Part shown: piece by piece, positions 18,589 to 47,115 of the stretch
How the letters are laid out: every line of letters starts with the position of its first letter
Numbering within the stretch: the stretch's first letter is position 1
From: Ranitomeya imitator
Taxonomy: Eukaryota
NCBI RefSeq assembly: GCF_032444005.1
Contig: NC_091286.1
Location: forward strand, 11,532,001-11,596,000
DNA: 64,000 bases
Direction of reading: 5' to 3'
Made by a program: the position numbers and the translations under genes
Notes under the pieces: generated by a model
Database searches by the model: none
The model's input: the letters and a program-made list of their open reading frames with translations, nothing else
What the model was told of the DNA's origin: nothing

Positions 18589-18754
18589 GATAAACAGCTA
18601 AGGTCAGAGCCATTCAAGGATTAAGAGGAGGAAAAAAAAAAAAAAATCAGCCAGGCTGCAATTAAGGCTAGGCAGCAACCTCAGAGGAGAGAAAAAAAAC
18701 TTCCTCAGACTACTTTTCCTCCTACTTCAGCCCAAACATTTTGGCCGGCTATAC

Positions 18755-19485: not shown

Positions 19486-19520
19486 GACTGCACCAGCAGA
19501 ATAGTGAGCGCAGCTCTGGA

Positions 19521-23867: not shown

Positions 23868-23897
23868 GTATTACAGTATTACAGTAATGTAATGTAT

Positions 23898-26800
23898 GAT
23901 TCGGATTCCTGGACCACGGTGTGAATTACTTGTACGATGGACTCCTCGCCAGAGACGTACTACACCTCAACAAACCTGGGAAACACACATTCGCCAGAAG
24001 ACTCGCTACACTCATCAGGAGGGCGTTAAACTAGAAGAAGAGGGGACGGGAAGAAAAACATTAGACTTGAACAAAGAAGACCCAGGAAAACAAACTCAGA
24101 TGGGAGGTAAGAACATTTCTAAAACAATCCACAGCGAGGAGATTGGAACAAAACAAAATCCTCTAAACTGCATGCTCGCAAACGCCAGAAGCCTGACAAA
24201 CAAGATGGAAGAACTAGAAGCAGAAATATCTACAGGTAACTTTGACATAGTGGGAATAACCGAGACATGGTTAGATGAAAGCTATGACTGGGCAGTTAAC
24301 TTACAGGGTTACAGTCTGTTTAGAAAGGATCGTAAAAATCGGAGAGGAGGAGGGGTTTGTCTCTATGTAAAGTCTTGTCTAAAGTCCACTTTAAGGGAGG
24401 ATATTAGCGAAGGAAATGAGGATGTCGAGTCCATATGGGTCGAAATTCATGGAGGGAAAAATGGTAACAAAATTCTCATTGGGGTCTGTTACAAACCCCC
24501 AAATATAACAGAAACCATGGAAAGTCTACTTCTAAAGCAGATAGATGAAGCTGCAACCCATAATGAGGTCCTGGTTATGGGGGACTTTAACTACCCGGAT
24601 ATTAACTGGGAAACAGAAACCTGTGAAACCCATAAAGGCAACAGGTTTCTGCTAATAACCAAGAAAAATTATCTTTCACAATTGGTGCAGAATCCAACCA
24701 GAGGAGCAGCACTTTTAGACCTAATACTATCTAATAGACCTGACAGAATAACAAATCTGCAGGTGGTTGGGCATTTAGGAAATAGCGACCACAATATTGT
24801 GCAGTTTCACCTGTCTTTCACTAGGGGGACTTGTCAGGGAGTCACAAAAACACTGAACTTTAGGAAGGCAAAGTTTGAACAGCTTAGAGATGCCCTTAAT
24901 CTGGTAGACTGGGACAATATCCTCAGAAATAAGAATACAGATAATAAATGGGAAATGTTTAAGAACATCCTAAATAGGCAGTGTAAGCGGTTTATACCTT
25001 GTGGGAATAAAAGGACTAGAAATTGGGTTTTTCCTATGTGGCTAAACAAAGAAGTAAGACAGGCAATTAACAGTAAAAAGAAAGCATTTGCACTACTAAA
25101 GCAGGATGGCACCATTGAAGCTCTAAAAAACTATAGGGAGAAAAATACTTTATCTAAAAAACTAATTAAAGCTGCCAAAAAGGAAACAGAGAAGCACATT
25201 GCTAAGGAGAGTAAAACTAATCCCAAACTGTTCTTCAACTATATCAATAGTAAAAGAATAAAAACTGAAAATGTAGGCCCCTTAAAAAATAGTGAGGAAA
25301 GAATGGTTGTAGATGACGAGGAAAAAGCTAACATATTAAACACCTTCTTCTCCACGGTATTCACGGTGGAAAATGAAATGCTAGGTGAAATCCCAAGAAA
25401 CAATGAAAACCCTATATTAAGGGTCACCAATCTAACCCAAGAAGAGGTGCGAAATCGGCTAAATAAGATTAAAATAGATAAATCTCCGGGTCCGGATGGC
25501 ATACACCCACGAGTACTAAGAGAACTAAGTAATGTAATAGATAAACCATTATTTCTTATTTTTAGGGACTCTATAGCGACAGGGTCTGTTCCGCAGGACT
25601 GGCGCATAGCAAATGTGGTGCCAATATTCAAAAAGGGCTCTAAAAGTGAACCTGGAAATTATAGGCCAGTAAGTCTAACCTCAATTGTTGGTAAAATATT
25701 TGAAGGGTTTCTGAGGGATGTTATTCTGGATTATCTCAATGAGAATAACTGTTTAACTCCATATCAGCATGGGTTTATGAGAAATCGCTCCTGTCAAACC
25801 AATCTAATCAGTTTTTATGAAGAGGTAAGCTATAGGCTGGACCACGGTGAGTCATTGGACGTGGTATATCTCGATTTTTCCAAAGCGTTTGATACCGTGC
25901 CGCACAAGAGGTTGGTACACAAAATGAGAATGCTTGGTCTGGGGGAAAATGTGTGTAAATGGGTTAGTAACTGGCTTAGTGATAGAAAGCAGAGGGTGGT
26001 TATAAATGGTATAGTCTCTAACTGGGTCGCTGTGACCAGTGGGGACCGCAGGGGTCAGTATTGGGACCTGTTCTCTTCAACATATTCATTAATGATCTGG
26101 TAGAAGGTTTACACAGTAAAATATCGATATTTGCAGATGATACAAAACTATGTAAAGCAGTTAATACAAGAGAAGATAGTATTCTGCTACAGATGGATCT
26201 GGATAAGTTGGAAACTTGGGCTGAAAGGTGGCAGATGAGGTTTAACAATGATAAATGTAAGGTTATACACATGGGAAGAAGGAATCAATGTCACCATTAC
26301 ACACTGAACGGGAAACCACTGGGTAAATCTGACAGGGAGAAGGACTTGGGGATCCTAGTTAATGATAAACTTACCTGGAGCAGCCAGTGCCAGGCAGCAG
26401 CTGCCAAGGCAAACAGGATCATGGGGTGCATTAAAAGAGGTCTGGATACACATGATGAGAGCATTATACTGCCTCTGTACAAATCCCTAGTTAGACCGCA
26501 CATGGAGTACTGTGTCCAGTTTTGGGCACCGGTGCTCAGGAAGGATATAATGGAACTAGAGAGAGTACAAAGGAGGGCAACAAAATTAATAAAGGGGATG
26601 GGAGAACTACAATACCCAGATAGATTAGCGAAATTAGGATTATTTAGTCTAGAAAAAAGACGACTGAGGGGCGATCTAATAACCATGTATAAGTATATAA
26701 GGGGACAATACAAATATCTCGCTGAGGATCTGTTAATACCAAGGAAGGTGACGGGCACAAGGGGGCATTCTTTGCGTCTGGAGGAGAGAAGGTTTTTCCA

Positions 26801-27057
26801 CCAACATAGAAGAGGATTCTTTACTGTTAGGGCAGTGAGAATCTGGAATTGCTTGCCTGAGGAGGTGGTGATGGCGAACTCAGTCGAGGGGTTCAAGAGA
26901 GGCCTGGATGTCTTCCTGGAGCAGAACAATATTGTATCATACAATTATTAGGTTCTGTAGAAGGACGTAGATCTGGGTATTTATTATGATGGAATATAGG
27001 CTGAACTGGATGGACAAATGTCTTTTTTCGGCCTTACTAACTATGTTACTATGTTAC
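23898..27057 (+). mobile_element. CR1 LINE, 5'-truncated within ORF1
   Basis: ORF1 tail (FGFLDHG...RDVLHLN...RALN*, esterase-like DxxH) ending at 24034; full EN+RT ORF2; 3' stem-loop AGGCTGAA/TTCGGCCT; (CTATGTTA)n tail. Confidence 0.96.
24100..26951 (+). pseudogene. CR1 ORF2 (APE endonuclease + RT) with a 1-bp deletion frameshift at 26044/26045
   Basis: NARSL, GITETW, GDFN, SDHN endonuclease motifs; RT split between ORFs 23896-26103 and 26061-26951; GGGGTACC has become GGGGACC. Confidence 0.9.
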
Positions 27058-27938
27058 ACAGTGACTGCACCAGCAGAATAGTGAGTGCAGCTCTGGGGTA
27101 CAATACAGGATGTAACTCAGGATCAGTAATGTAATGTATGTACACAGTGACTGCACCAGCAGAATAGTGAGTGCAGCTCTGGGGTATAATACAGGATGTC
27201 ACTCAGGATCAGTAATGTATGTACACAGTGACTGCACCAGCAGAATAGTGAGTGCAGCTCTGGGGTATAATACAGGAGGTAACTCAGGATCAGTAATGTA
27301 TGTACACAGTGACTGCACTAGCAGAATAGTGAGTGCAGCTCTGGAGTATAATACAGGAGGTAACTCAGGATCAGTAATGTAATGTATGTACACAGTGACT
27401 GCACCAGCAGAATAGTGAGTGCAGCTCTGGAGTATAATACAGGATGTAACTCAGGATCAGTAATGTATGTACACAGTGACTGCACCAGCAGAATAGTGAG
27501 TGCAGCTCTGGGGTATAATACAGGAGGTAACTCAGGATCAGTAATGTAATGTATGTACACAGTCACTGCACTAGCAGAATAGTGAGTGCAGCTCTGGGGT
27601 ATAATGCAGGAGGTAACTCAGGATCAGTAATGTAATGTATGTACACAGTGACTGCACCCGCAGAATAGTGAGTGCAGCTCTGGAGTATAATACAGGATGT
27701 AACTCAGGATCAGTAATGTAATGTATGTACACAGTGACTGCACCAGCAGAATAGTGAGTGCAGCTCTGGAGTATAATACAGAAGGTAACTCAGGATCAGT
27801 AATGTAATGTACGTACATTGTGACTGCACCAGCAGAATAGTGAGTGCAGCTCTGGGGTACAATACAGGATGTAACTCAGGATCAGTAATGTAATGTATGT
27901 ACACAGTGACTGCACCAGCAGAATAGTGAGTGCAGCTC
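27058..27938. repeat. 86-bp satellite, block 3
   Basis: Same unit; resumes in register directly after the CR1 tail. Confidence 0.96.
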
Positions 27939-28400: not shown

Positions 28401-28565
28401 CGCACATGGCCGGGACTGGTGTGAACATTCCAAACGTCACTCACTTTTTGCCCAACTTTGTGGACTTTTCTTAGTGTTATGGCAAAATGAGAAGTCTGAT
28501 GCATCGGCCCGTGTGTGTGTGAGTGTGTGTGAACGCGGGCTACATGGACGGAGAGCCGCACAAAC

Positions 28566-28755: not shown

Positions 28756-29095
28756 TGCTCCCCATGGCGGTGTCAGCCCCTCCCCATGGCGGTGTCAGCC
28801 CCTCCCCATGGCGGTGTCAGCCCCTCCCCATGGCGGTGTCAGCCCCTCCCCATGGCGGTGTCAGCCCCTCCCCATGGCGGTGTCAGCCCCTCCCCATGGC
28901 GGTGTCAGCCCCTCCCCATGTTGGTCAGTCAGTCCTTCCCCCATGGCGGTGTCATTCCTTCCCCCATGGTGGTGTCAGTCCTTCCCCCATGGCGGTGTCA
29001 GTCCTTCCCCCATGGCGGTGTCAGTCCTTCCCCCATGGCGGTGTCAGCCCTTCCCCCATGGCGGTGTCAGCCCTTCCCCCATGGCGGTGTCAGTC
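28756..29095. repeat. 22-bp minisatellite, ~15 copies
   Basis: Unit CCCCATGGCGGTGTCAGCCCCT. Confidence 0.93.
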
Positions 29096-29265
29096 CCATC
29101 TACCATCCTCCTCGGGTCACTGAATGTCCGGCGTTACATTAATGGAGAGTGAAGTCACAAAGAGCGATCGCTACCTCCACATCTACATAAGTGAGGGAAT
29201 ACTAGGGAATCGCACTGCAAGCAATTGTCTAATATTCTGCAGGTCTACAGCGCCCACACCGACAT

Positions 29266-29835
29266 TAGTGACAGCTGCTGACAATCAGAGGGGGCACTGA
29301 CGGGCAGATCAGTGACAGCTGCTGACAATCAGAGGGGGCACTGACGGGCAGATCAGTGACAGCTGCTGACAATCAGAGGGGGCACTGACGGGCAGATCAG
29401 TGACAGCTGCTGACAATCAGAGGGGGCACTGACGGGCAGATCAGTGACAGCTGCTGACAATCAGAGGGGGCACTGACGGGCAGATCAGTAACAGCTGCTG
29501 ACAATCAGAGGGGGCACTGACGGGCAGATCAGTGACAGCTGCTGACAATCAGAGAGGTCACTGACGGGCAGATCAGTGACAGCTGCTGACAATCAGAGGG
29601 GGCACTGACTGGCAGATCAGTGACAGCTGCTGACAATCAGAGGGGGCACTGACGGGCAGATCAGTGACAGCTGCTGACAATCAGAGAGGTCACTGACGGG
29701 CAGATCAGTGACAGCTGCTGACAATCAGAGGGGGCACTGACTGGCAGATCAGTGACAGCTGCTGACAATCAGAGGGGGCACTGACGGGCAGATCAGTAAC
29801 AGCTGCTGACAATCAGAGGGGGCACTGACGGGCAG
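29266..29835. repeat. 44-bp minisatellite, ~13 copies
   Basis: Unit GTGACAGCTGCTGACAATCAGAGGGGGCACTGACGGGCAGATCA; begins ~10 nt past the exon 4 donor. Confidence 0.95.
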
Positions 29836-29845
29836 AGGGACGTAC

Positions 29846-30757: not shown

Positions 30758-31022
30758 TCAGCATCCCGCGGTAGTTCAGGTCCATGTCGCGGCTCTCCGA
30801 TCGCACTTTTATGGCGTCCAGGATGGAGTCGGGGGTGAGCAGCGCAGACGGCCGGACCACGTTCAGCAGCTCCGTGAGGCTCATAAGTGGAAGGCGCACG
30901 GCGGCCATGATCTCCGAGTGATTCTCCTTCGTGTTGTGTCTACACCAGCGCATCAGAGACTGGAAAACGTCCTTCTCCGGCGCAGCGAACGAGTCTCTCC
31001 GCACAATATCCAGGAGCGCGGC
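30758..31022 (-). CDS. BTBD9: BTBD9 coding exon 3 (265 nt; BACK region): AALLDIVRRDSFAAPEKDVF...DMDLNYRGML
   Basis: Recognised BTBD9 sequence; TTCACAG|GCC acceptor, A|GTACGC donor. Confidence 0.97.
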
Positions 31023-34000
31023 CTGTGAACAGAGTGGGCAGAGTTACTACAGGGGGCACACAAGGGGCTCACACCATACCACCCCTGTGAACAGAGTGGG
31101 CAGAGTTACTACAGGGGGCACACAAGGGGCTCACATCATACCACCCCCGTGTACAGAGCGGGCAGAGTGACTACAGGGGGCACACAAGGGGCTCACATCA
31201 TACCATCCCTGTGAACAGAGTGGGCAGAGTGACTACAGGGGGCACACAAGGGGCTCACACCATACCACCCCTGTGTACAGAGCGGGCAGAGTGACTACAG
31301 GGGGCACACAAGGGGCTCACATCATACCACCCCTGTGTACAGAGCGGGTAGAGTGACTACAGGGGGCACACAAGGGGCTCACATCATACCACCCCTGTGT
31401 ACAGAGCGGGCAGAGTGACTACAGGGGGCACACAAGGGGCTAACATCATACCACCCCTGTGTACAGAGCGGGCAGAGTGACTACAGGGGGCACACAAGGG
31501 GCTCACATCATACCACCCCTGTGTACAGAGCGGGCAGAGTGACTACAGGGGGCACACAAGGGGCTCACATCAAACCACCCCTGTGTACAGAGTGGGCAGA
31601 GTGACTACAGGTGGCACACAAGGGGCTAACATCATACCACCCCTGTGTACAGAGCGGGCAGAGTGACTACAGGGGGCACACAAGGGGCTCACATCATACC
31701 ACCCCTGTGTACAGAGCGGGCAGAGTGACTACAGGGGGCACACAAGGGGCTCACATCATACCACCCCTGTGTACAGAGCGGGCAGAGTGACTACAGGGGG
31801 CACACAAGGGGCTAACATCATACCACCCCTGTGTACAAAGCGGGCAGAGTGACTACAGGGGGCACACAAGGGGCTCACATCATACCATCCCTGTGTACAG
31901 AGCGGGTAGAGTGACTACAGGGGGCACACAAGGAGCTCACACCATACCACCCCTGTGTACAGAGCGGGCAGAGTGACTACAGGGGGCACACAAGGGGCTC
32001 ACATCATACCACCCCTGTGTACAGAGCGGGCAGAGTGACTACAGGGGGCACACAAGGGGCTCACATCATACCACCCCTGTGTACAGAGCGGGCAGAGTGA
32101 CTACAGGGGGCACACAAGGGGCTCACATCAAACCACCCCTGTGTACAGAGCGGGCAGAGTGACTACAGGTGGCACACAAGGGGCTAACATCATACCACCC
32201 CTGTGTACAGAGCGGGCAGAGTGACTACAGGGGGCACACAAGGGGCTCACATCAAACCACCCCTGTGTACAGAGCGGGCAGAGTGACTACAGGGGGCACA
32301 CAAGGGGCTCACATCATACCACCCCTGTGTACAGAGCGGGCAGAGTGACTACAGGGGGCACACAAGGGGCTAACATCATACCACCCCTGTGTACAAAGCG
32401 GGCAGAGTGACTACAGGGGGCACACAAGGGGCTCACATCATACCACCCCTGTGTACAGAGCGGACAGAGTGACTACAGGGGCACACAAGGGGCTCACATC
32501 ATACCATCCCTGTGTACAGAGCGGGTAGAGTGACTACAGGGGGCACACAAGGGGCTCACATCATACCACCCCTGTGTACAGAGTGGGCAGAGTGACTACA
32601 GGGGGCACACAAGGGGCTCACATCATACCACCCCTGTGTACAGAGCGGGTAGAGTGACTACAGGGGGCACACAAGGGGCTCACATCATACCACCCCTGTG
32701 TACAGAGCGGACAGAGTGACTACAGGGGGCACACAAGGGGCTCACATCATACCATCCCTGTGAACAGAGTGGGCAGAGTGACTACAGGGGGCACACAAGG
32801 GGCTCACATCATACCACACCTGTGTACAGAGCGGGCAGAGTGACTACAGGGGGCACACAAGGGGCTAACATCATACCACCCCTGTGTACAGAGCGGGCAG
32901 AGTGACTACAGGGGGCACACAAGGGGCTCTCATCATACCACCCCTGTGTACAGAGCGGACAGAGTGACTACAGGGGGCACACAAGGGGCTCACATCATAC
33001 CACCCCTGTGTACAGAGCGGGCAGTGACTACAGGGGGCACACAAGGGGCTCACATCATACCACCCCTGTGTACAGAGCGGGCAGTGACTACAGGGGGCAC
33101 ACAAGGGGCTCACATCATACCACCCCTGTGTACAGAGTGGGCAGAGTGACTACAGGGGGCACACAAGGGGCTCACATCATACCACCCCTGTGTACAGAGT
33201 GGGCAGAGTGACTACAGGGGGCACACAAGGGGCTCACATCATACCACCCCTGTGTACAGAGCGGGCAGAGTGACTACAGGGGGCACACAAGGAACTCACA
33301 TCATACCACCCCTGTGTACAGAGCGGGCAGAGTGACTACAGGGGGCACACAAGGGGCTCACATCATACCATCCCTGTGAACAGAGTGGGCAGAGTGACTA
33401 CAGGGGGCACACAAGGGGCTCACACCATACCACCCCTGTGTACAGAGCGGGCAGAGTGACTACAGGGGGCACACAAGGGGCTCACATCATACCACCCCTG
33501 TGTACAGAGCGGGTAGAGTGACTACAGGGGGCACACAAGGGGCTCACACCATACCACCCCTGTGTACAGAGCGGGCAGAGTGACTACAGGGGGCACACAA
33601 GGGGCTCACATCAAACCACCCCTGTGTACAGAGCGGGCAGAGTGACTACAGGGGGCACACAAGGGGCTCACATCATACCACCCCTGTGTACAGAGCGGGC
33701 AGAGTGACTACAGGGGGCACACAAGGGGCTCACACCATACCACCCCTGTGTACAGAGCGGGCAGAGTGACTACAGGGGGCACACAAGGGGCTCACATCAA
33801 ACCACCCCTGTGTACAGAGCGGGCAGAGTGACTACAGGGGGCACACAAGGGGCTCACATCATACCACCCCTGTGTACAGAGCGGGCAGAGTGACTACAGG
33901 GGGCACACAAGGGGCTCACATCATACCACACCTGTGTACAGAGCGGGCAGAGTCATTACAGGGGGCACACAAGGGGCTCACATCATACCACCCCTGTGTA

Positions 34001-35080
34001 CAGAGCGGGCAGAGTGACTACAGGGGCACACAAGGGGCTCACATCATACCACCCCTGTGTACAGAGCGGGTAGAGTGACTACAGGGGGCACACAAGGGGC
34101 TCACATCATACCACCCCTGTGTACAGAGCGGGCAGAGTGACTACAGGGGGCACACAAGGAACTCACATCATACCACCCCTGTGTATAGAGCGGGCAGACT
34201 GACTACAGGGGGCACACAAGGGGCTCACATCATACCACCCCTGTGTACAGAGCGGGCAGAGTGACTACAGGGGGCACACAAGGGGCTCACATCAAACCAC
34301 CCCTGTGTACAGAGCGGGCAGAGTGACTACAGGGGGCACACAAGGGGCTCACATCATACCACCCCTGTGTGCAGAGCGGGCAGAGTGACTACAGGGGGAA
34401 CGCAAGGGGCTCACATCATACCACCCCTGTGTACAGAGCGGACAGAGTGACTACAGGGGGCACACAAGGGGCTCACATCATACCACCCCTGTGTACAGAG
34501 CGGGCAGAGTGACTACAGGGGGCACACAAGGGGCTCACATCATACCACCCCTGTGTACAGAGCGGGCAGAGTGACTACAGGGGGCACACATCATACCACC
34601 CCTGTGTACAGAGCGGACAAAGTGACTACAGGGGGCACACAAGGGGCTCACATCATACCACCCCTGTGTACAGAGCGGGCAGAGTGACTACAGGGGGCAC
34701 ACAAGGGGCTCACATCATACCCCACCTGTGTACAGAGCGGACAGAGTGACTACAGGGGGCACACAAGGGGCTCACATCATACCACCCCTGTGTACAGAGC
34801 GGGCAGAGTGACTACAGGGGGCACACAAGGGGCTCACATCATACCACCCCTGTGTACAGAGCGGGCAGAGTGACTACAGGGGGCACACAAGGGGCTCACA
34901 TCATACCACCCCTGTGTACAGAGCGGGCAGAGTCATTACAGGGGGCACACAAGGGGCTCACATCATACCACCCCTGTGTACAGAGCGGGCAGAGTCACTA
35001 CAGGGGGCACACAAGGGGCTCACATCATACCACCCCTGTGTACAGAGCGGGCAGAGTCACTACAGGGGGCACACAAGGGG
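31023..35080. repeat. 62-bp minisatellite, ~65 copies, whose unit contains the exon 3 splice acceptor
   Basis: Minus-strand unit ...CCCCCTGTAGTCACTCTGCCCGCTCTGTACACAG|G; fills nearly the whole intron. Confidence 0.97.
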
Positions 35081-35128: not shown

Positions 35129-35492
35129 CTTGGACAGGGTCAGGAAGCCGTCACTGGCGAGGACGTCCTGCGCGTTCCGGTCCATGAACACACAGCAGGT
35201 GGAGCAGAGCTTGGACAGCGAGTAGAGGCTGGCCACGTCGTAGATCATGCACACGTTCTGGATCTTCAGGATGGTGCACAGGTACTCGGACGTGGAGTCC
35301 TCCAGCTCCGGGAAGCCATACTTGTGCGCCAGGCTCAGCAAGTCCAGCAGCACCTCCTCCCGCTCGTCCCGCAGGCTGGCCCGGCCCGTGTACATGTACT
35401 TCATCAGCATGGAGAAGGCCTCGGGGCCGGTGTCCTGCAGGGTGATCTCCGCCTCCGGGCGAGACTCCCTCATCCCTCCGTATAACAGCGCC
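35129..35492 (-). CDS. BTBD9: BTBD9 coding exon 2 (364 nt; BTB/BACK): ALLYGGMRESRPEAEITL...SDGFLTLSK
   Basis: Recognised BTBD9 sequence; TACGCAG|G acceptor, AAG|GTGCTG donor; in frame with exons 1 and 3. Confidence 0.96.
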
Positions 35493-38400
35493 CTGCGTAG
35501 AGCGACATACAGGGAGACACATGAGTATATGGACAGCGGGCGGCCCCCGAATATATACACCCCCCACACTGCGCCCTCATCCCTCCGTATAACAGCGCCC
35601 TGCGTAGAGCGACACACAGGGAGACACATGAGTATATGGACAGCGGGCGGCCCCCGAATATATACACCCCCCACACTGCGCCCTCATCCCTCCGTATAAC
35701 AGCGCCCTGCGTAGAGCGACATACAGGGAGACACATGAGTATATGGACAGCGGGCGGCCCCCGAATATATACACCCCCACACTGCGCCCTCATCCCTCCG
35801 TATAACAGCGCCCTGCGTAGTGTGGCATACAGGGAGACACATGAGTATATGGACAGAGGGCGGCCCCGAATATATACACCCCCCACACTCCGCCCTCATC
35901 CCTCCGTATAACAGCGCCCTGCGTAGTGCGGCATACAGGGAGACACATGAGTACATGGACAGCGAGCGGCCCCCGAATATATACACCCCACAATACACCG
36001 CCCTACACCCCGCCCTCATCCCTCCGTATAACAGCGCCCTGTGTGGAGCGACATACAGGGAGACACATGAGTATATGGACAGCGGGCGGCCCCCAAATAT
36101 ATACACCCCCCACACTCCGCCATCATCCCTCCGTATAACAGCGCCCTGCGTAGAGCGACATACAGGGAGACACATGAGTATATGGACAGCGGGCGGCCCC
36201 CAAATATATACACCCCACAATACACCGCCCTCATCCCTCCGTATAACAGCGCACTGCGTAGAGCGACATACAGGGAGACACATGAGTATATGGACAGCGA
36301 GCGGCCCCCAAATATATACACCCCCCACACTCCGCCATCATCCCTCCGTATAACAGCGCCCTGCGTAGAGCGACATACAGGGAGACACATGAGTATATGG
36401 ACAGCGAGTGGCCCCCAAATATATACACCCCGCAATACACCGCCCTCATCCCTCCGTATAACAGCGCCCTGTGTGGAGCGACATACAGGGAGACACATGA
36501 GTATATGGACAGCGGGCGGCCCCCAAATATATACACCCCCCACACTCCGCCATCATCCCTCCGTATAACAGCGCCCTGCGTAGAGCGACATACAGGGAGA
36601 CACATGAGTATATGGACAGCGGGCGGCCCCCAAATATATACACCCCACAATACACCGCCCTCATCCCTCCGTATAACAGCGCACTGCGTAGAGCGACATA
36701 CAGGGAGACACATGAGTATATGGACAGCGAGCGGCCCCCAAATATATACACCCCCCACACTCCGCCATCATCCCTCCGTATAACAGCGCCCTGCGTAGAG
36801 CGACATACAGGGAGACACATGAGTATATGGACAGCGAGTGGCCCCCAAATATATACACCCCGCAATACACCGCCCTCATCCCTCCGTATAACAGCGCCCT
36901 GCGTAGAGCGACATACAGGGAGACACATGAGTATATGGACAGCGGGCGGCCCCCGAATATATACACCCCCCACACTGCGCCCTCATCCCTCCGTATAACA
37001 GCGCCCTGCGTAGAGCGACATACAGGGAGATACATGAGTATATGGACAGCGAGCGGCCCCCAAATATATACACCCCCCACACTCCGCCATCATCCCTCCG
37101 TATAACAGCGCCCTGCGTAGAGCGACATACAGGGAGACACATGAGTATATGGACAGCGAGTGGCCCCCAAATATATACACCCCGCAATACACCCCCCACA
37201 CTCCGCCCTCATCCCTCCGTATAACAGCGCCCTGTGTAGAGTGACATACAGGGAGACACATGAGTATATGGACAGCGAGCGGCCCCCAAATATATACACC
37301 CCCCACACTCCGCCCTCATCCCTCCATATAACAGCGCCCTGCGTAGAGCGACATACAGGGAGACACATGAGTATATGGACAGCGGGCGGCCCCCGAATAT
37401 ATACACCCCACAATACACCGCCCTCATCCCTCCGTATAACAGCGCCCTGTGTAGAGCGACATACAGGGAGACACATGAGTATATGGACAGCGAGCGGCCC
37501 CCAAATATATACACCCCGCAATACACCGCCCTCACCCCTCCATATAACAGCGCCCTGTGTAGAGCGACATACAGGGAGACACATGAGTATATGGACAGCG
37601 GGCGGCCCCCGAATATATACACCCCCCACACTCCGCCCTCATCCCTCCGTATAACAGCGCCCTGCGTAGAGCGGCATACAGGGAGACACATGAGTATATG
37701 GACAGCGAGCGGCCCCCAAATATATACACCCCGCAATACACCGCCCTACACCCCGCCCTCATCCCTCCGTATAACAGCGCCCTGCGTAGAGCGACATACA
37801 GGGAGACACATGAGTATATGGACAGCGAGCGGCCCCCAAATATATACACCCCCCACACTGCGCCCTCATCCCTCCATATAACAGCGCCCTGCGTAGAGCG
37901 ACATACAGGGAGACACATGAGTATATGGACAGTGGGCGGCCCCCAAATATATACACCCCCCACACTGCGCCCTCATCCCTCCATATAACAGCGCCCTGCG
38001 TAGAGCGACATACAGGGAGACACATGAGTATATGGACAGTGGGCGGCCCCCAAATATATACACCCCCCACACTGCGCCCTCATCCTTCCGTATAACAGCG
38101 CCCTGCGTAGAGCGACATACAGGGAGATACATGAGTATATGGACAGCGAGCGGCCCCCAAATATATACACCCCCCACACTGCGCCCTCATCCCTCCGTAT
38201 AACAGCGCCCTGCGTAGAGCGACATACAGGGAGATACATGAGTATATGGACAGCGAGCGGCCCCCAAATATATACACCCCCCACACTCCGCCATCATCCC
38301 TCCGTATAACAGCGCCCTGCGTAGAGCGACATACAGGGAGACACATGAGTATATGGACAGCGAGTGGCCCCCAAATATATACACCCCGCAATACACCCCC

Positions 38401-40690
38401 CACACTCCGCCCTCATCCCTCCGTATAACAGCGCCCTGTGTAGAGTGACATACAGGGAGACACATGAGTATATGGACAGCGAGCGGCCCCCAAATATATA
38501 CACCCCCCACACTCCGCCCTCATCCCTCCATATAACAGCGCCCTGCGTAGAGCGACATACAGGGAGACACATGAGTATATGGACAGCGGGCGGCCCCCGA
38601 ATATATACACCCCACAATACACCGCCCTCATCCCTCCGTATAACAGCGCCCTGTGTAGAGCGACATACAGGGAGACACATGAGTATATGGACAGCGAGCG
38701 GCCCCCAAATATATACACCCCGCAATACACCGCCCTCACCCCTCCATATAACAGCGCCCTGTGTAGAGCGACATACAGGGAGACACATGAGTATATGGAC
38801 AGCGGGCGGCCCCCGAATATATACACCCCCCACACTCCGCCCTCATCCCTCCGTATAACAGCGCCCTGCGTAGAGCGGCATACAGGGAGACACATGAGTA
38901 TATGGACAGCGAGCGGCCCCCAAATATATACACCCCGCAATACACCGCCCTACACCCCGCCCTCATCCCTCCGTATAACAGCGCCCTGCGTAGAGCGACA
39001 TACAGGGAGACACATGAGTATATGGACAGCGAGCGGCCCCCAAATATATACACCCCCCACACTGCGCCCTCATCCCTCCATATAACAGCGCCCTGCGTAG
39101 AGCGACATACAGGGAGACACATGAGTATATGGACAGTGGGCGGCCCCCAAATATATACACCCCCCACACTGCGCCCTCATCCCTCCATATAACAGCGCCC
39201 TGCGTAGAGCGACATACAGGGAGACACATGAGTATATGGACAGTGGGCGGCCCCCAAATATATACACCCCCCACACTGCGCCCTCATCCTTCCGTATAAC
39301 AGCGCCCTGCGTAGAGCGACATACAGGGAGACACATGAGTATATGGACAGCGGGCGGCCCCCGAATATATACACCCCGCAATACACCGCCCTACACCCCT
39401 CCATATAACAGCGCCCTGCGTAGAGCGACATACAGGGAGACACATGAGTATATGGACAGCGAGCGGCCCCCAAATATATACACCCCCCACACTGCGCCCT
39501 CATCCCTCCATATAACAGCGCCCTGTGTAGAGCGACATACAGGGAGACACATGAGTATATGGACAGCGGGCGGCCCCCGAATATATACACCCCCCACACT
39601 GCGCCCTCATCCCTCCATATAACAGCGCCCTGTGTAGAGCGACATACAGGGAGACACATGAGTATATGGACAGCGGGCGGCCCCCGAATATATACACCCC
39701 GCAATACACCCCCCACACTCCGCCCTCATCCCTCCGTATAACAGCGCCCTGTGTAGAGCGACATACAGGGAGACACATGAGTATATGGACAGCGAGCGGC
39801 CCCCAAATATATACACCCCCCACACTCCGCCCTCATCCCTCCGTATAACAGCGCCCTGCGTAGAGTGACATACAGGGAGACACATGAGTATATGGACAGC
39901 GAGCGGCCCCCAAATATATACACCCCCCACACTCCGCCCTCATCCCTCCATATAACAGCGCCCTGCGTAGAGCGACACACAGGGAGACACATGAGTATAT
40001 GGACAGCGAGCGGCCCCCAAATATATACACCCCGCAATACACCGCCATACACCCCTCCATATAACAGCGCCCTGTGTAGAGCGACATACAGGGAGACACA
40101 TGAGTATATGGACAGCGGGCGGCCCCCGAATATATACACCCCCCACACTCATCTCTCCGTATAACAGCGCCCTGCGTAGAGCGACATACAGGGAGACACA
40201 TGAGTACATGGACAGCGGGCGGCCCCCGAATATATACACCCCCCACACTCCGCCCTCATCCCTCCGTATAACAGCGCCCTGCGTAGAGCGACATACAGGG
40301 AGACACATGAGTATATGGACAGCGGGCGGCCCCCAAATATATACACCCCCCACATTGCGCCCTCATCCCTCCGTATAACAGCGCCCTGCGTAGAGCGACA
40401 TACAGGGAGACACATGAGTATATGGACAGCGAGCGGCCCCCGAATATATACACCCCCCACACTCATCCCTCCGTATAACAGCGCCCTGCGTAGAGCGACA
40501 TACAGGGAGACACATGAGTATATGGACAGCGGGCGGCCCCCGAATATATACACCCCCCACACTGCGCCCTCATCCCTCCATATAACAGCGCCCTGCGTAG
40601 AGCGACATACAGGGAGACACATGAGTACATGGACAGCGGGCGGCCCCCAAATATATACACCCCGCATACACCCTACACGCACCGCCCTAC
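35467..40690. repeat. 107-bp minisatellite, ~49 copies, whose unit includes the exon 2 acceptor plus 26 coding nt
   Basis: Unit starts at 35467 and recurs at 35574; the first unit overlaps the exon at 35467-35492. Confidence 0.97.
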
Positions 40691-40914
40691 ACCCCGTGCC
40701 GTCACATATACTTTGTTTCCACTATTGTTCTCTTCTTGCCGTCAATGAATAAGAACTCACAAGAATTAACACAAGCACCGTCCTTGTCCTGTCAGCACAG
40801 CTGAGGATTTGGTACAATGTTTCAGTAGAAAAATAAAAATCCTGACTGATGAGGTAAGATTCCAGCCACTGACAACAAGCAGAGATCCTGCACGATGGAG
40901 ACGGCGCGTCATAC

Positions 40915-41099
40915 CTGAAGTACTGGCAGCGGGCGGCGAGGATGACTCTGTGCGCAGGAAACCGCATCTTGTCCACCACGAAGGTGACGTCGCTGTACTC
41001 CTCGCCGCTGATCAGGGCGCCCACGTGCTCCGAGAGGATGTGCACATGGTCGATCTCTCCGACCGCCGTGTACGGACGCAGGGGGTGACTGTTACTCAT
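40915..41099 (-). CDS. BTBD9: BTBD9 coding exon 1 (185 nt CDS; exon starts at 41119): MSNSHPLRPYTAVGEIDHVHILSEH...AARCQYFR
   Basis: BTBD9 N-terminus recognised; TTCTTCCAG acceptor at 41120-41121, AG|GTATGA donor. Confidence 0.97.
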
Positions 41100-41149
41100 C
41101 CTGGAGCCCAACTGCAGCCCTGGAAGAAAGGACGGACGGGTGAGGAGGG

Positions 41150-44100
41150 AAGACAGGGACACGAGGGCGAGACTGGCGACATGAGGGCGAGACGGGCGAC
41201 ACGAGGGCGAAGCCTGCACCAGGGGCGAAAGGGGGAGACGGGCGACACAAGGGCGAAGCCTGCACCAGGGGCGAGAGGGGGAGACGGGCGACACGAGGAC
41301 GAAGCCTGCACCAGGGGCGAAAGGGGGAGACGGGCGACACGAGGGCGAAGCCTGCACCAGGGGCGAAAGGGGGAGACGGGCGACACGAGGGCGAAGCCTG
41401 CACCAGGGGCGAGAGGGGAGACGGGCGACACGAGGACGAAGCCTGCACCAGGGGCGAGAGGGGGAGACGGGCGACACAAGGACGAAGCCTGCACCAGGGA
41501 CGAGAGGGGGAGACGGGCGACACGAGGACGAAGCCTGCACCAGGGGCGAGAGGGGGAGACGGGCGACACGAGGACGAAGCCTGCACCAGGGGCGAGAGGG
41601 GGAGACGGCGACACGAGGGCGAAGCCTGCACCAGGGGCGAGAGGGGGAGACGGGCGACACGAGGGCGAAGCCTGCACCAGGGGCGAAAGGGGGAGACGGG
41701 CAACACAAGGACGAAGCCTGCACCAGGGGCGAAAGGGGGAGACGGGCGACACGAGGGCGAAGCCTGCACCAGGGGCGAAAGGGGGAGACGGGCGACACGA
41801 GGGCGAAGCCTGCACCAGGGGCGAGAGGGGGAGACGGGCGACACGAGGACGAAGTCTGCACCAGGGGCGAGAGGGGGAGACGGGCGACACGAGGACGAAG
41901 CCTGCACCAGGGACGAGAGGGGGAGACGGGCGACACGAGGACGAAGCCTGCACCAGGGGCGAGAGGGGGAGACGGGCGACACGAGGACGAAGCCTGCACC
42001 AGGGGCGAGAGGGGGAGACGGCGACACGAGGGCGAAGCCTGCACCAGGGGCGAGAGGGGGAGACGGGCGACACGAGGGCGAAGCCTGCACCAGGGGCGAG
42101 AGGGGGAGACGGCGACACGAGGGCGAAGCCTGCACCAGGGGCGAGAGGGGGAGACGGCGACACGAGGACGAAGCCTGCACCAGGGACGAGAGGGGGAGAC
42201 GGGCGTCACGAGGACGAAGCCTGCACCAGGGATGAGAGGGGGAGACGGGCGTCAAGCGGACGAAGCCTGCACCAGGGGCGAGAGGGGGAGATGGGCGACA
42301 CGAGGACGAAGCCTGCACCAGGGACGAGAGGGGGAGATGGGCGACACGAGGACGAAGCCTGCACCAGGGACGAGAGGGGGAGATGGGCGACACGAGGACG
42401 AAGCCTGCACCAGGGGCGAGAGGGGAGACGGGCGATACGAGGGCGAAGCCTGCACCAGGGGCGAGAGGGGGAGATGGGCGACACGAGGACGAAGCCTGCA
42501 CCAGGGGGGGAGACGGGCGACACGAGGACGAAGCCTGCACCAGGAACGAGAGGGGGAGACGGCGTCACGCGGACGAAGCCTGCACCAGGGACGAGAGGGG
42601 GAGATGGGCGACACGAGGACGAAGCCTGCACCAGGGACGAGAGGGGGAGATGGGCGACACGAGGACGAAGCCTGCACCAGGGGCGAGAGGGGGAGACGGG
42701 CGACACGAGGGTGAAGCCTGCACCAGGGACGAGAGGGGGAGACGGGCGACAGAGGACGAAGCCTGCACCAGGGGCGAGAGGGGGAGACGGGCGACACGAG
42801 GACGAAGCCTGCACCAGGGGCGAGAGGGGGAGACGGGCGACACGAGGACGAAGCCTGCACCAGGGGCGAGAGGGGGAGACGGGCGACACGAGGACGAAGC
42901 CTGCACCAGGGACGAGAGGGGGAGACGGCGACACGAGGGCGAAGCCTGCACCAGGGGGGGAGACGGGCGACACGAGGACGAAGCCTGCACCAGGGGCGAG
43001 AGGGGGAGACGGGTGACACGAGGACGAAGCCTGCACCAGGGACGAGAGGGGGAGACGGGCGACACGAGGACGAAGCCTGCACCAGGGGGGGAGACGGGCG
43101 ACACGAGGGCGAAGCCTGCACCAGGGGCGAGAGGGGGAGACGGGTGACACGAGGACGAAGCCTGCACCAGGGACGAGAGGGGGAGACGGGCGACACGAGG
43201 ACGAAGCCTGCACCAGGGACGAGAGGGGGAGACGGCGACACGAGGACGAAGCCTGCACCAGGGGCGAGAGGGGGAGACGGGCGTCACGAGGACGAAGCCT
43301 GCACCAGGGGCGAGAGGGGGAGACGGGCGACACGAGGACGAAGCCTGCACCAGGGGCGAGAGGGGGAGACTGCGACACGAGGGCGAAACCTGCACCAGGG
43401 ACGAGAGGGGGAGACGGCGACACGAGGACGAAGCCTGCACCAGGGGCGAGAGGGGGAGACGGGCGACACGAGGACGAAGCCTGCACCAGGGGCGAGAGGG
43501 GGAGACGGGCGACACGAGGACGAAGCCTGCACCAGGGGCGAGAGGGGGAGACTGCGACACGAGGGCGAAACCTGCACCAGGGACGAGAGGGGGAGACGGC
43601 GACACGAGGACGAAGCCTGCACCAGGGGCGAGAGGGGGAGACGGGCGACACGAGGACGAAGCCTGCACCAGGGGCGAGAGGGGGAGACTGCGACACGAGG
43701 ACGAAGCCTGCACCAGGGGCGAGAGGGGGAGACTGCGACACGAGGACGAAGCCTGCACCAGGGACGAGAGGGGGAGACGGCGACACGAGGACGAAGCCTG
43801 CACCAGGGGCGAGAGGGGAGACGGGCGACACGAGGACGAAGCCTGCACCAGGGGCGAGAGGGGGAGACGGCGACACGAGGACGAAGCCTGCACCAGGGGC
43901 GAGAGGGGAGACGGGCGACACGAGGACGAAGCCTGCACCAGGGACGAGAGGGGGAGACGGCGACACGAGGGCAAAGCCTGCACCAGGGACGAGAGGGGGA
44001 GACGGCGACACGAGGGCGAAGCCTGCACCAGGGGCGAGAGGGGGAGACAGCGACACGAGGGCGAAACCTGCACCAGGGGCGAGAGGGGGAGACGGGTGAC

Positions 44101-44590
44101 ACGAGGGCGAAGCCTGCACCAGGGGCGAGAGGGGAGACGGGCGACACGAGGACGAAGCCTGCACCAGGGACGAGAGGGGGAGACGGCGACACGAGGGCAA
44201 AGCCTGCACCAGGGACGAGAGGGGGAGACGGCGACACGAGGGCGAAGCCTGCACCAGGGGCGAGAGGGGAGACGGGCGACACGAGGGCAAAGCCTGCACC
44301 AGGGGCGAGAGGGGAGACGGGCGACACGAGGACGAAGCCTGCACCAGGGGCGAGAGGGGAGACGGGCGACACGAGGACGAAGCCTGCACCAGGGGCGAGA
44401 GGGGGAGACGGGCGACACGAGGGCGAAGCCTGCACCAGGGGGGGAGACGGGCGACACGAGGGCAAAGCCTGCACCAGGGGGGGAGACGGGCGACACGAGG
44501 GCAAAGCCTGCACCAGGGGGGGAGACGGGCGACACGAGGGCAAAGCCTGCACCAGGGGCGAGAAGGGGAGACGGGCGACACGAGGGCGAT
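41150..44590. repeat. ~46-bp purine-rich minisatellite, ~75 copies
   Basis: Unit GCACCAGGGGCGAGAGGGGGAGACGGGCGACACGAGGACGAAGCCT, with 45- and 39-bp variants. Confidence 0.96.
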
Positions 44591-44624
44591 ATACAACACA
44601 CGGAGAATGGGGGGGGGGGGGGAG

Positions 44625-47115
44625 AGGATACATAACGCACGGGGGGAGGAGGATACATAACGCACGGGGGGAGGAGGATACATAACGCACGGGGGGAGGA
44701 TATATAACGCACGGGGGGAGGAGGATATATAACGCACGGGGGGAGGAGGATATATAACGCACGGGGGGAGGAGGATATATAACGCACGGGGGGAGGAGGA
44801 TATATAATGCACGGGGGGGGGGGAGGATATTTAACGCACGGCGGGAGGATATTTAACGCACGGCGGGAGGATATTTAACGCACGGGGGGGGAGAAGGATA
44901 TATAACGCACGGGGGGGAGGAGGACATATAACGCACGGGGGGGAGGAGGACATATAACGCACGGGGGGAGGATATATAACGCACGGGGGGAGGAGGATAT
45001 ATAACGCACGGGGGGAGGAGGGTATATAACGCACGGGGGGAGGAGGATATATAACGCACGGGGGGAGGAGGATATATAACGCACGGGGGGAGGATATATA
45101 ACGCACGGGGGGAGGAGGATATATAACGCACGGGGGGAGGAGGATATATAACGCACGGGGGGAGGAGGATATATAACGCACGGGGGGAGGAGGATATATA
45201 ACGCACGGGGGGAGGAGGATATATAACGCACGGGGGGAGGAGGATATATAACGCACGGGGGGAGGAGGATATATAACGCACGGGGGGAGGAGGATATATA
45301 ACGCACGGGGGGAGGAGGATATATAACGCACGGGGGGAGGAGGATATATAACGCACGGGGGGAGGAGGATATATAACGCACGGGGGGAGGAGGATATATA
45401 ACGCACGGGGGGAGGAGAGGAGGAGGATATATAACGCACGGGGGGAGGAGGATATATAACGCACGGGGGGAGGACGATACATAACGCACGGGGGGAGGAG
45501 GATACATAACGCACGGGGGGAGGAGGATACATAACGCACGCGGGGAGGAGGATACATAACGCACGGGTGGAGGATACATAACGCAAGGAGGGAGGAGGAT
45601 ACAGAACGCACGGGGGGAGGAGGATATATAACGCACGGGGGGAGGAGGATACAGAATGCACAGGGGGAGGAGGATACAGAACGCACGGGGGGAGGATACA
45701 GAACGCACGGGGGGAGGAGGATACAGAACGCAAGGAGGGAGGAGGATACAGAAAGCACGGGGGGAGGAGGATATATAACGCACGGGGGAGGTTATATAAC
45801 GCACGGGGGGAGGAGGATATATAACGCACGCGGGGAGGAGGATACATAACGCACGCGGGGAGGAGGATACATAACGCACGGGGGGAGGAGGATACAGAAC
45901 GCAAGGAGGGAGGAGGATACAGAACGCACGGGGGGAGGAGGATATATAACGCACGGGGGGTGGAGGATATATAACGCACGGGGGGAGGAGGATATATAAC
46001 GCACGGGGGGGAGGAGGATATATAACGCACGGGGGGAGGAGGATATATAACGCACGGGGGGAGGAGGATATATAACGCACGGGGGGGGAGAAGGATATAT
46101 AACGCACGGGGGAGAAGGATATATAACGCACGGGGGGAGGAGGATATATAACGCACGGGGGGAAGAGGATATGTAACGCACGGGGGGAAGAGGATATATA
46201 ACGCACGGGGGGAGGAGGATATATAACGCACGGGGGGAGGATATATAACGCACGGGGGGAGGAGGATATATAACGCACGGGGGGAGGAGGATATATAACG
46301 CACGGTGGGAGGAGGATATATAACGCACGGGGGGAGGAGGATATATAACGCACGGGGGGAGGAGGATACATAACGCACGGGGGGAGGAGGAGGATATATA
46401 ACGCACGGTGGGAGGAGGATTCATAACGCACGGGGGGAGGAGGATATATAACGCACGGGGGAGGAGGATATATAACGCACGGGGGAGGAGGATATATAAC
46501 GCACGGGGGGAAGAGGATATATAACGCACGGGGGGAGGAGGATACATAACGCACGGGGGGAGGAGGATATATAACGCACGGGGGGAGGAGGATATATAAC
46601 GCACGGGGGGAGGATACATAACGCACGGGGGGAGGAGGATATATAACGCACGGGGGAGGAGGAGGATATATAACGCACGGGGGGAAGAGGATATATAACG
46701 CACGGGGGGAAGAGGATATATAACGCACGGGGGGAGGAGGATATATAACGCACGGGGGGAGGAGGATATATAACGCACGGGGGGAGGAGGATACATAACG
46801 CACGGGGGGAGGAGGATATATAACGCACGGGGGGAGGAGGATATATAACGCACGGGGGGAGGAGGATATATAACGCACGGGGGGAGGAGGATATATAACG
46901 CACGGGGGGAGGATACATAACGCACGGGGGGAGGATACATAACGCACGGGGGGGAGGAGGATACATAACGCACGGGGGGGAGGAGGATACATAACGCACG
47001 GGGGAGGAGGATATATAACGCACGGTGGAGGAGGAGGATACATAACGCACGGGGGGAGGAGGATACATAACGCACGGGGGGAGGAGGATATTTAACGCAC
47101 GGAGGGAATATAACG
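44625..47115. repeat. 25-bp minisatellite, ~100 copies
   Basis: Unit GGGGGGAGGAGGATATATAACGCAC. Confidence 0.96.

What the first reader, a model, noticed from the sequence alone, without database searches (positions are those of the whole stretch)
35467..40690. Minisatellite built from a live splice acceptor plus the first 26 coding nt of BTBD9 exon 2: ~48 decoy, poison 3' splice sites
Seen: each 107-bp unit on the sense strand reads ...CATGTGTCTCCCTGTATGTCGCTCTACGCAG|GGCGCTGTTATACGGAGGGATGAGGG. This is the real pyrimidine-rich region, the AG and the codons for ALLYGGMR. Only the last copy continues into the exon, and the AG is kept in the unit variants I inspected. Splicing into an upstream copy reads RALLYGGMR-AQCGGC...RCYTEG and stops at the TGA in the next copy's GGGATGAGG (107 is not a multiple of 3). 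Inference: the spliceosome must skip dozens of near-identical acceptors, presumably by exon definition. Copy number could tune productive BTBD9 mRNA through NMD. Weak CA|GTGTGG or GA|GTGTGG donors 30 nt into many units could instead yield in-frame 10-aa micro-exons. I know of no description of this arrangement for this gene.
Basis: partly seen in the sequence, partly recalled or inferred. Interest (0 to 1): 0.85.

Follow-up and report, generated by a model that had tools for sequence, protein, structure and literature searches.

The report
Splice-acceptor minisatellite in frog BTBD9
In a poison frog's BTBD9 gene, the last stretch of intron 1 plus the first 26 bases of exon 2 has been copied head-to-tail 47 extra times, a real and striking array of look-alike splice sites, but of a kind already described ("mirage" minisatellites) and most likely a tolerated by-product of a very repeat-prone chromosome end rather than a regulatory device.

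Summary
A 107-bp minisatellite (35467-40663, sense = minus strand) carries 48 copies of branch-point candidate + pyrimidine tract + CAG + the first 26 nt of BTBD9 exon 2. That is 47 decoys plus the real acceptor; all 48 keep the AG. Splicing from exon 1 into any decoy meets a premature stop.

The window is Ranitomeya imitator BTBD9: exons 1-2 match the RefSeq model exactly. It lies within about 19 Mb of a chromosome end, and 51% of it is minisatellite. The next intron has a 62-bp array ending exactly at its acceptor.

In Eleutherodactylus coqui the orthologous intron is single-copy (399 nt) and colinear with donor-to-first-decoy here (322 nt). The array is therefore a lineage-specific expansion of a short intron's 3' end.

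All annotated dendrobatid BTBD9 isoforms use the canonical junction, and no decoy-derived protein is on record.

The kind is known: amphioxus "mirages" and the human F7 IVS7 VNTR both leave the exon-proximal site in use. No evidence here supports NMD tuning, and transcripts could not be examined.

Earlier notes of this scan list many similar splice-site arrays at other genes of the same genome; I did not check them.

The parts
35467..40663 (-). 107-bp minisatellite with 47 full decoy units plus the real terminal copy. Each unit holds 26 nt of exon-2 start, a G-rich junction, a CTCAT branch-point candidate, a pyrimidine tract and CAG.
40664..40699 (-). Degenerate leading edge of the array. This is ancestral G-rich intron sequence that the 119-120-nt units still retain, and it marks the left breakpoint of the founding duplication (about -104 relative to the AG).
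40593..40914 (-). Donor-to-first-decoy interval (322 nt). It is colinear with the whole single-copy intron 1 (399 nt) of E. coqui, so it represents the ancestral intron.
40915..41119 (-). BTBD9 ATG exon (ATG at 41099, 61 codons plus 2 nt), followed by donor CAG|GTATGA.
35129..35492 (-). BTBD9 exon 2 (BTB/BACK). Its first 26 nt are the exon-derived part of the repeat unit. The real acceptor AG is at 35494-35493.
36867..39274 (-). Two adjacent blocks of about 1204 bp (11 units each) that are 97-100% identical. This is a very recent higher-order duplication inside the array.
31023..35080 (-). 62-bp minisatellite filling intron 2. It has 64 copies of CACAG|G and ends exactly at the exon-3 acceptor. 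It is context showing that the phenomenon is not unique to intron 1.
41183..44589 (-). 46-bp minisatellite in the intron upstream of the ATG exon. It carries 74-75 copies of a pyrimidine tract plus GGTGCAG|G and ends 64 nt before that exon's acceptor.

Best explanation
This is a 'mirage'-type minisatellite. A segment of about 130 bp, spanning the last ~104 nt of a short (~320-400 nt) intron 1 and the first 26 nt of exon 2 of Ranitomeya imitator BTBD9, was duplicated in tandem. It lost 13 nt internally to give the dominant 107-bp unit. It was then amplified to 47 extra copies by unequal crossing-over or replication slippage, in a GC-rich, recombination-prone chromosome-end region that is saturated with minisatellites.

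Shown here: the anatomy, the origin, the lineage specificity, the recent turnover, and the fact that any decoy use is out of frame.

Inferred: the gene keeps working because the exon-proximal copy is the only acceptor that can be paired across a normal-sized exon (364 nt) with the exon-2 donor and full exon sequence (exon definition). Each decoy has only 26 nt of exon sequence, followed by G6 and G5 runs that mark intron, and has no usable donor. Whatever leaks into decoys would be removed by NMD. The array is a tolerated by-product, not an evolved regulator.
For: Anatomy: 48 acceptor modules, all with CAG.

Origin:
- The 119-120-nt units retain more of the unique upstream intron than the 107-nt units.
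- The donor-to-decoy-1 stretch (322 nt) aligns end to end with the single-copy 399-nt intron 1 of E. coqui, which has the same acceptor and exon start and no array.
- Another vertebrate contig (L001) has a 2.75-kb array-free intron at the same position and phase.

Context:
- 50.8% of the window is tandem arrays.
- Once arrays are collapsed to one unit, BTBD9 introns 1, 2 and 4 are about 320, 110 and 316 nt. Intron 3 is 692 nt as it stands, including a 182-nt array.
- A duplication in introns this short readily includes a splice site. Intron 2 has its own acceptor-containing array.
- The window lies within about 19 Mb of the end of a 716.6-Mb chromosome.
- Exon GC3 is 0.87-0.95.
- Frog extended subtelomeres are known for minisatellite expansion by unequal crossing-over, with TGGG/AGGG-rich units (PMC10794172).

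Turnover: a 1204-bp block is duplicated at 97-100% identity.

Neutrality:
- Variants are mostly transitions, and CpG columns vary at twice the rate of other columns.
- The fraction of variable columns is similar in the splice module and elsewhere.
- AG retention is not significant.

Gene function is kept:
- Exons 1-2 match RefSeq model XP_069624401.1 exactly.
- BTBD9 is 96-99% identical among dendrobatoid frogs (dendrobatids and Anomaloglossus).
- All isoform models have the canonical junction.

Precedent: amphioxus mirages and the human F7 IVS7 VNTR use only the exon-proximal site (PMC3087553; PMC3902484; PMC1557585).

Decoy context: extra G6 and G5 runs at +34 and +51 are absent from the real exon.
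Against: - No transcript data could be examined. The canonical junction rests on predicted RefSeq models.
- The first decoy sits in the full ancestral intron context, only 322 nt from the donor, and is transcribed minutes before the real site. Intron definition or first-come-first-served kinetics would favour it.
- Six decoys are identical to the real site over -40..+26 and carry the purine-rich exon start, so they are not obviously crippled.
- Tolerated does not exclude a quantitative cost or effect on expression.
- Whether the older assembly record that reproduces the span is independent is unknown.
Confidence: 0.75

Rival explanations
1. One reading: a sizeable fraction of BTBD9 pre-mRNA is spliced into decoys, each giving a premature stop, so array copy number sets productive mRNA output through NMD. 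This could be an evolved rheostat or at least a functionally relevant expression modifier.
For: - All 47 decoys keep CAG, a branch-point candidate (CTCAT at -30) and a pyrimidine tract with 73% Y.
- All give premature stops more than 340 nt before the next junction.
- Decoy 1 lies in the ancestral short-intron context.
- Arrays with recent turnover would make copy number variable.
Against: - No isoform model or database protein with decoy-derived sequence exists.
- The array is absent in E. coqui and in another vertebrate.
- There is no excess conservation of the AG.
- Comparable arrays occur in neighbouring introns, and, per unverified notes, at many other genes of this genome. This argues for a mutational process rather than a gene-specific device.
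- In published analogues the pseudo-sites stay silent (PMC1557585, PMC3087553, PMC3902484).
Confidence: 0.12
2. Decoy units are included as small exons. One form is the 30-nt in-frame micro-exon (acceptor to xxA|GTGTGG). The other is an 89-nt pseudo-exon ending at CCT|GTATGT. These would add peptide repeats or frameshifts.
For: - 31 of 47 units carry the +30 GT motif, followed by a G-run.
- Most units carry CCT|GTATGT at +89/+90, with 6 of 9 matches to the U1 consensus. The real exon-2 donor scores 4 of 9.
Against: - The +30 donor matches only 3 of 9 positions, and 30 nt is below the size at which vertebrate exons are recognised without special enhancers (established knowledge).
- The +89 site lies 18 nt before the next AG, inside its pyrimidine tract, and has T at -1.
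- An insertion would fall inside the conserved BTB fold.
- No such isoform is annotated in five dendrobatoid species, and no such protein is in the database.
Confidence: 0.03
3. Assembly artefact: the array exists, but its length or the perfect 1.2-kb internal duplication was created by the assembler.
For: Two 1204-bp blocks are 97-100% identical. Long near-identical tandem arrays are error-prone in assembly (PMC6868369, title and abstract only).
Against: - The units carry a structured pattern of variants and length classes, which is not a collapsed or stuttered copy.
- There is no N in the window.
- A gene model on another public R. imitator record (GCA_958301615.1) spans 17,128 nt from ATG to stop, against 17,126 nt over the same landmarks here. 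The summed array lengths are therefore reproduced.
Confidence: 0.05

Closest known systems
'Mirage' minisatellites of amphioxus (Adh3, troponin C, globins BflGb6/BflGb9, PGBD5)
   Same: Minisatellite-like tandem duplications whose unit spans an intron/exon boundary. In BflGb6 this is the 3' end of an intron plus the 5' part of exon 2, with units of 150-160 bp. Copies carry AG/GT signals. Concerted evolution and length instability are seen. RT-PCR shows regular splicing (PMC3087553; PMC3902484).
   Different: The amphioxus arrays have a few copies (3-6 in BflGb6), against 47 here. They were described in a cephalochordate, not a vertebrate. Normal splicing was shown experimentally there and is only inferred here.
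Human F7 intron 7 37-bp VNTR (5' pseudo-sites)
   Same: A vertebrate minisatellite whose terminal element spans an exon/intron junction, giving 5-9 splice sites identical in sequence. Only the exon-proximal one is used. The pseudo-sites are functional when unmasked but silent (PMC1557585).
   Different: It lies on the donor side, not the acceptor side. It has far fewer copies. The selection rule (5'->3' scanning from the exon) was tested by mutagenesis. For acceptors, the mirror-image rule is an inference.
Engineered tandem duplications of 3' splice sites (cis-competition constructs in globin genes)
   Same: Identical acceptors compete for one donor. Outcomes depended on proximity and adjacent exon sequence (as summarised in PMC1557585, and from general knowledge of Reed and Maniatis 1986).
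   Different: Those constructs are artificial, with two copies, and different laboratories reported conflicting outcomes. Here nature supplies 48 copies spread over 5.2 kb.
Subtelomeric minisatellite expansions in frog genomes
   Same: GC-rich terminal 20-30 Mb with high recombination. Tandem arrays are enriched in TGGG/AGGG/ACAG and are attributed to unequal crossing-over (PMC10794172). The unit here contains these tetramers, and the window lies within about 19 Mb of a chromosome end.
   Different: In the passages I read, that paper describes arrays derived from transposon fragments and generic satellites, not arrays built from splice junctions.
Poison exons and NMD-coupled alternative splicing
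   Same: Use of a decoy would introduce a premature stop upstream of an exon junction.
   Different: Regulated poison exons are typically conserved and used measurably. This array is lineage-specific, and no usage is documented.

Membership tests
Mirage minisatellite (tandem duplication of an intron/exon boundary) | Head-to-tail repeat with a minisatellite-sized unit | tested here: met
   Period 107, 47.9 copies, 91% matches.
Mirage minisatellite (tandem duplication of an intron/exon boundary) | Unit contains both intronic and exonic sequence of one authentic boundary | tested here: met
   The unit holds the last ~80 nt of the intron plus 26 nt of exon 2. The exon part is conserved across vertebrates (ALLYGGMR).
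Mirage minisatellite (tandem duplication of an intron/exon boundary) | Copies keep the splice dinucleotide | tested here: met
   47 of 47 decoys keep CAG.
Mirage minisatellite (tandem duplication of an intron/exon boundary) | The mature mRNA is normal and uses the authentic boundary copy | not testable with these tools
   Only RefSeq models with the canonical junction are available. No transcript contig was found.
Mirage minisatellite (tandem duplication of an intron/exon boundary) | Length instability or concerted evolution | tested here: inconclusive
   A higher-order 1204-bp duplication at 97-100% identity indicates recent turnover. No population or second-haplotype data were available. Another record gives the same span.
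F7-IVS7-type VNTR of silent pseudo-splice sites | [quoted passage not shown] | tested here: met
   26 decoys are identical over -20..+3, and 6 are identical over -40..+26.
F7-IVS7-type VNTR of silent pseudo-splice sites | Only the exon-proximal site is used physiologically | not testable with these tools
   This needs RNA data.
Regulated poison splice site / NMD switch | Alternative site introduces a premature stop more than 50-55 nt upstream of an exon junction | tested here: met
   All 47 decoys do so.
Regulated poison splice site / NMD switch | Conservation of the alternative site across species | tested here: not met
   The array is absent from the orthologous intron of E. coqui and from L001. 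Closer dendrobatids could not be fetched.
Regulated poison splice site / NMD switch | Documented use of the site | not testable with these tools
   No isoform or protein with decoy sequence is on record. This is weak negative evidence only.
Recursive splice site | The acceptor is immediately followed by a regenerated donor (AG|GTRAGT) | tested here: not met
   The junction reads CAG|GGCGCT in all units.

The most novel reading that the evidence does not exclude
Splice-junction ('mirage') minisatellites are common in the Ranitomeya genome. The BTBD9 array is a working example in which a measurable, copy-number-dependent share of transcripts is lost to decoy acceptors and NMD. Such arrays would then act as fast-mutating, heritable modifiers of gene dosage. 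They would also be a natural 48-way competition experiment showing that vertebrate 3' splice-site choice is dictated by exon definition even against a kinetically favoured, identical upstream site.
Probability: 0.1. Interest if true: 0.7.

Novelty: new member of a known kind. Interest (0 to 1): 0.4.

Why it matters
The locus is an extreme natural cis-competition construct. One donor faces 48 near-identical complete acceptors spread over 5.2 kb. The first sits in the ancestral short-intron context, and the last sits in the ancestral exon context.

Counting junction reads in existing R. imitator RNA-seq would directly pit intron definition and first-come-first-served kinetics against exon definition in vivo.

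Together with the neighbouring introns, and with the many unverified notes for other genes, it suggests that mirages extend to a vertebrate with a highly repeat-prone genome. Among the papers retrieved here they are reported only from amphioxus, apart from isolated cases such as human F7. That bears on how splicing fidelity tolerates rampant minisatellite birth, and on the duplication model of intron gain. As a BTBD9-specific regulatory device it probably does not matter.

Tried and rejected
1. Same-species transcripts.
- The exon-2 protein search returned only genomic ORFs of other vertebrates, at 83% identity or less.
- The exact look-up of the R. imitator protein found only the genome record, with no transcript contig.
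- A search with a 114-aa array-derived ORF, which would also have caught a 104-aa exon1-decoy product, found nothing. This is weak negative evidence.

2. Orthologous introns of close relatives. The records for R. variabilis, D. tinctorius, Anomaloglossus and the older R. imitator assembly gave no DNA, because the gene range or the file was too large. Only E. coqui and an unnamed vertebrate contig could be read.

3. RNA structure masking of decoys. Two decoys plus the real site fold no better than shuffles (z = 0.27). I rejected this as a discriminator.

4. Selection on decoy AGs or the splice module. The lower variant frequency in the module reflects a few high-frequency variants elsewhere that were spread by block duplication. 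The fraction of variable columns is similar (about 20-24%). Zero AG hits against 0.8-2.7 expected is not significant.

5. Recursive splicing. This is rejected because no donor is regenerated at the junction.

6. MaxEnt-type splice scores could not be computed, because no model files were available. I used pyrimidine fraction, a branch-point motif and U1 complementarity instead.

7. The original mirage paper (PMC117041) is not held. I cite it through PMC3087553.
Full report
**1. What is there**

Tandem Repeats Finder reports one array at 35467-40663 with period 107, 47.9 copies, 91% matches and score 8386. The gene runs on the minus strand.

Reading that strand, I located 48 copies of the same module. 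Each module has:
- a CTCAT branch-point candidate about 30 nt upstream;
- an interrupted pyrimidine tract (73% Y between -25 and -4);
- CAG;
- 26 nt identical or nearly identical to the start of exon 2.

Only the last copy (first exon base 35492) continues into the exon. The other 47 are decoys. All 48 keep CAG, and 45 of 47 decoys keep G at +1. Six decoys are identical to the real site over -40..+26, and 31 differ at no more than one base. Unit lengths are mostly 107 (27 units), with 108, 119-120, 100, 106 and 109 variants.

**2. The gene**

- The upstream exon (ATG 41099, last base 40915, donor GT 40914) and exon 2 (35492-35129) hit Pfam BTB and BACK.
- Their translations are exact substrings, at residues 1-61 and 63-183, of the RefSeq model 'BTB/POZ domain-containing protein 9 isoform X1 [Ranitomeya imitator]'. 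The split Arg codon lies between them.
- Exons 3, 4 and 5 follow at 31022, 30065 and 28685.
- The exon-2 boundaries (R|ALLYGGMRES ... LSK|) are conserved in genomic ORFs of many vertebrates.
- The chromosome record is 716.6 Mb. The window therefore lies within about 19 Mb of a chromosome end.

**3. Consequences of decoy use**

Joining exon 1 to any decoy gives a premature stop. In the others it comes 8-118 codons after. It is always more than 340 nt upstream of the exon 2/3 junction, so the usual NMD rule is satisfied.

The +30 xxA|GTGTGG motif occurs in 31 of 47 units and is in frame, but it matches only 3 of 9 U1-consensus positions. A better donor-like CCT|GTATGT (6 of 9) lies at +89/+90, inside the next unit's pyrimidine tract.

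The junction never regenerates a donor, so recursive splicing is excluded.

**4. Origin**

The 119-120-nt units retain a stretch (CGGGGTGTAGGGCGGTG...) that is also found in the unique intron sequence just upstream of the array. The 107-nt unit is an internal-deletion derivative.

The interval from the exon-1 donor to the first decoy (322 nt) aligns end to end with the entire single-copy intron 1 (399 nt) of Eleutherodactylus coqui. That intron ends in ...TTACACAG|GGCGCTATTATATGGAGGGATGAGGG and has no array. A second vertebrate contig of unknown species has an array-free 2.75-kb intron at the same position and phase.

The array is therefore a lineage-specific tandem amplification of roughly -104..+26 around the acceptor of a short intron. 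The first decoy has inherited the ancestral intron context, and the last copy has inherited the ancestral exon context.

**5. Context**

- 50.8% of the 64-kb window is tandem arrays of about 17 different units.
- Window GC is 53%, and GC3 of exons 1-2 is 0.87-0.95.
- A telomere-like array sits at 60153-60449.
- Every BTBD9 intron in the window holds at least one array. After collapsing arrays to one unit, introns 1, 2 and 4 are about 320, 110 and 316 nt. Intron 3 is 692 nt in total, with a 182-nt array.
- Intron 2's 62-bp array ends exactly at the exon-3 acceptor and carries 64 copies of CACAG|G.
- The 46-bp array upstream of the ATG exon carries 74-75 copies of a pyrimidine tract plus GGTGCAG|G.

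In introns this short, a 60-130-bp duplication will often include a splice site. My rough estimate for intron 1 is about 130/(322+130), roughly 30%; this is inference.

Bredeson et al. describe frog 'extended subtelomeres' of 20-30 Mb. They have high GC and high recombination, and minisatellite expansion there is attributed to unequal crossing-over. The arrays are enriched in TGGG/AGGG/ACAG (PMC10794172). The unit here fits that description, and its sense strand holds 36 G4-like motifs.

Earlier notes of this scan list many more arrays built from splice donors, acceptors and branch points at other genes of this genome, and from other RNA-processing signals as well. I did not verify these.

**6. 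Turnover and selection**

Two adjacent 1204-bp blocks (11 units each) are 97-100% identical, which indicates a very recent higher-order event.

Substitutions against the consensus are 3.3% per site per copy. Transitions outnumber transversions 2:1, and CpG columns vary at twice the non-CpG rate.

The splice module shows fewer variant copies. However, it has a similar fraction of variable columns to the rest of the unit. The difference comes from a few variants that were spread by block duplication. Zero AG losses against 0.8-2.7 expected is not significant. I see no signature of selection for or against the decoys.

**7. Is the gene still working, and is the assembly right?**

BTBD9 is 96-99% identical among R. 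imitator, R. variabilis, D. tinctorius, P. terribilis and Anomaloglossus. All annotated isoforms have the canonical ...CQYFR|ALLYGGMRESRPEAE junction. The longer isoforms differ only by an N-terminal extension.

No protein resembling an array-derived ORF exists among 5.8 billion sequences. No transcript contig for the R. imitator protein was found. Direct RNA evidence is therefore lacking.

A gene model on another R. imitator record spans 17,128 nt from ATG to stop, against 17,126 nt between the same landmarks here. The summed array lengths are thus reproduced, but I cannot tell whether that record is independent.

**8. Mechanism (inference)**

The exon-2 donor can pair across a 364-nt exon only with the real acceptor. 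The nearest decoys would make exons of 471, 578, 684 nt and so on up to 5.4 kb. Exon definition is known to handle such lengths poorly.

Decoys have only 26 nt of exon sequence, followed by G6 and G5 runs that are absent from the real exon. G-triplets are classical intron markers in short GC-rich vertebrate introns (established knowledge: McCullough and Berget).

RNA folding gives no discriminating structure (z = 0.27).

The counter-argument is kinetic. Decoy 1 is 322 nt from the donor, in its native intron context, and is transcribed first. This makes the locus a genuine test case.

**9. Comparison with the known**

The arrangement has a name. [quoted passage not shown] They carry AG/GT signals yet do not disturb splicing (PMC3087553; PMC3902484).

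In humans, the F7 intron-7 37-bp VNTR spans the exon-7 donor. It gives 5-9 identical pseudo-donors, of which only the exon-proximal one is used (PMC1557585).

The present case is the acceptor-side, high-copy, vertebrate counterpart.

**10. Verdict**

The poison potential is real, but there is no evidence for a regulatory role.
- This is a new member of a known kind.
- Interest is moderate: it is a natural experiment on splice-site choice and an example of how far a repeat-prone genome can load a gene with decoy signals.

Noticed in passing
window 31023-35080 (minus strand): A 62-bp minisatellite (65.7 copies) makes up about 99% of BTBD9 intron 2. It ends exactly at the exon-3 acceptor, with 64 copies of ...CTCTGTACACAG|G. 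It starts 48 nt after the exon-2 donor.
   Followed up: partly
window 41183-44589 and 44617-47107: The intron upstream of the ATG exon is filled by a 46-bp array (75 copies, each with a strong pyrimidine tract plus GGTGCAG|G) and a 25-bp array (100 copies). The 46-bp array stops 64 nt before the acceptor.
   Followed up: partly
window 29267-29836 and 28758-29097: Intron 4 holds a 44-bp array that begins only 9 nt after the exon-4 donor, and a 22-bp array that ends 72 nt (about 70) before the exon-5 acceptor. Without the arrays the intron would be about 316 nt.
   Followed up: partly
window 36867-39274: Two adjacent 1204-bp higher-order blocks of the 107-bp array are 97-100% identical. This is either a very recent unequal exchange or something to check in raw reads.
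   Followed up: partly
window 60153-60449: An interstitial telomere-like array (TTAGGG variants mixed with GGATCCC, periods 15/30/63).
   Followed up: no
window 11628-27938: Three blocks of one 86-bp satellite (11628-13794, 21859-23867, 27050-27938) are separated by long ORFs (1358 aa on the minus strand at 14524-18597; 736 aa on the plus strand at 23893-26100). These are presumably retroelements inserted in BTBD9 intron 5.
   Followed up: no
window 28445-28564 and 23974-24030: An older R. imitator gene model (CAJ0941079.1, P0322) reads through the exon-5 donor into the intron. It then splices to a short exon at 24030-23974, at the edge of the retroelement-sized ORF region (23893-26100, plus strand). 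This is a likely annotation artefact, or a cryptic terminal exon.
   Followed up: partly
L003:3973-4916 and L003:6948-7159 (E. coqui BTBD9): The E. coqui orthologue also carries arrays in its short BTBD9 introns: a 151-bp array of 6.3 copies starting about 24 nt after the exon-2 donor, and a 33-bp array in intron 3. They use different units from those of R. imitator. About 3.7 kb of this locus is N.
   Followed up: partly
alignment A2 (R. variabilis and D. tinctorius isoform X1): Some dendrobatid BTBD9 models have a 39-aa N-terminal extension that reads through the sequence just upstream of the ATG (…GLQLGSR-MSNSHP). This implies an upstream exon with an alternative start beyond the 46-bp and 25-bp arrays.
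   Followed up: no
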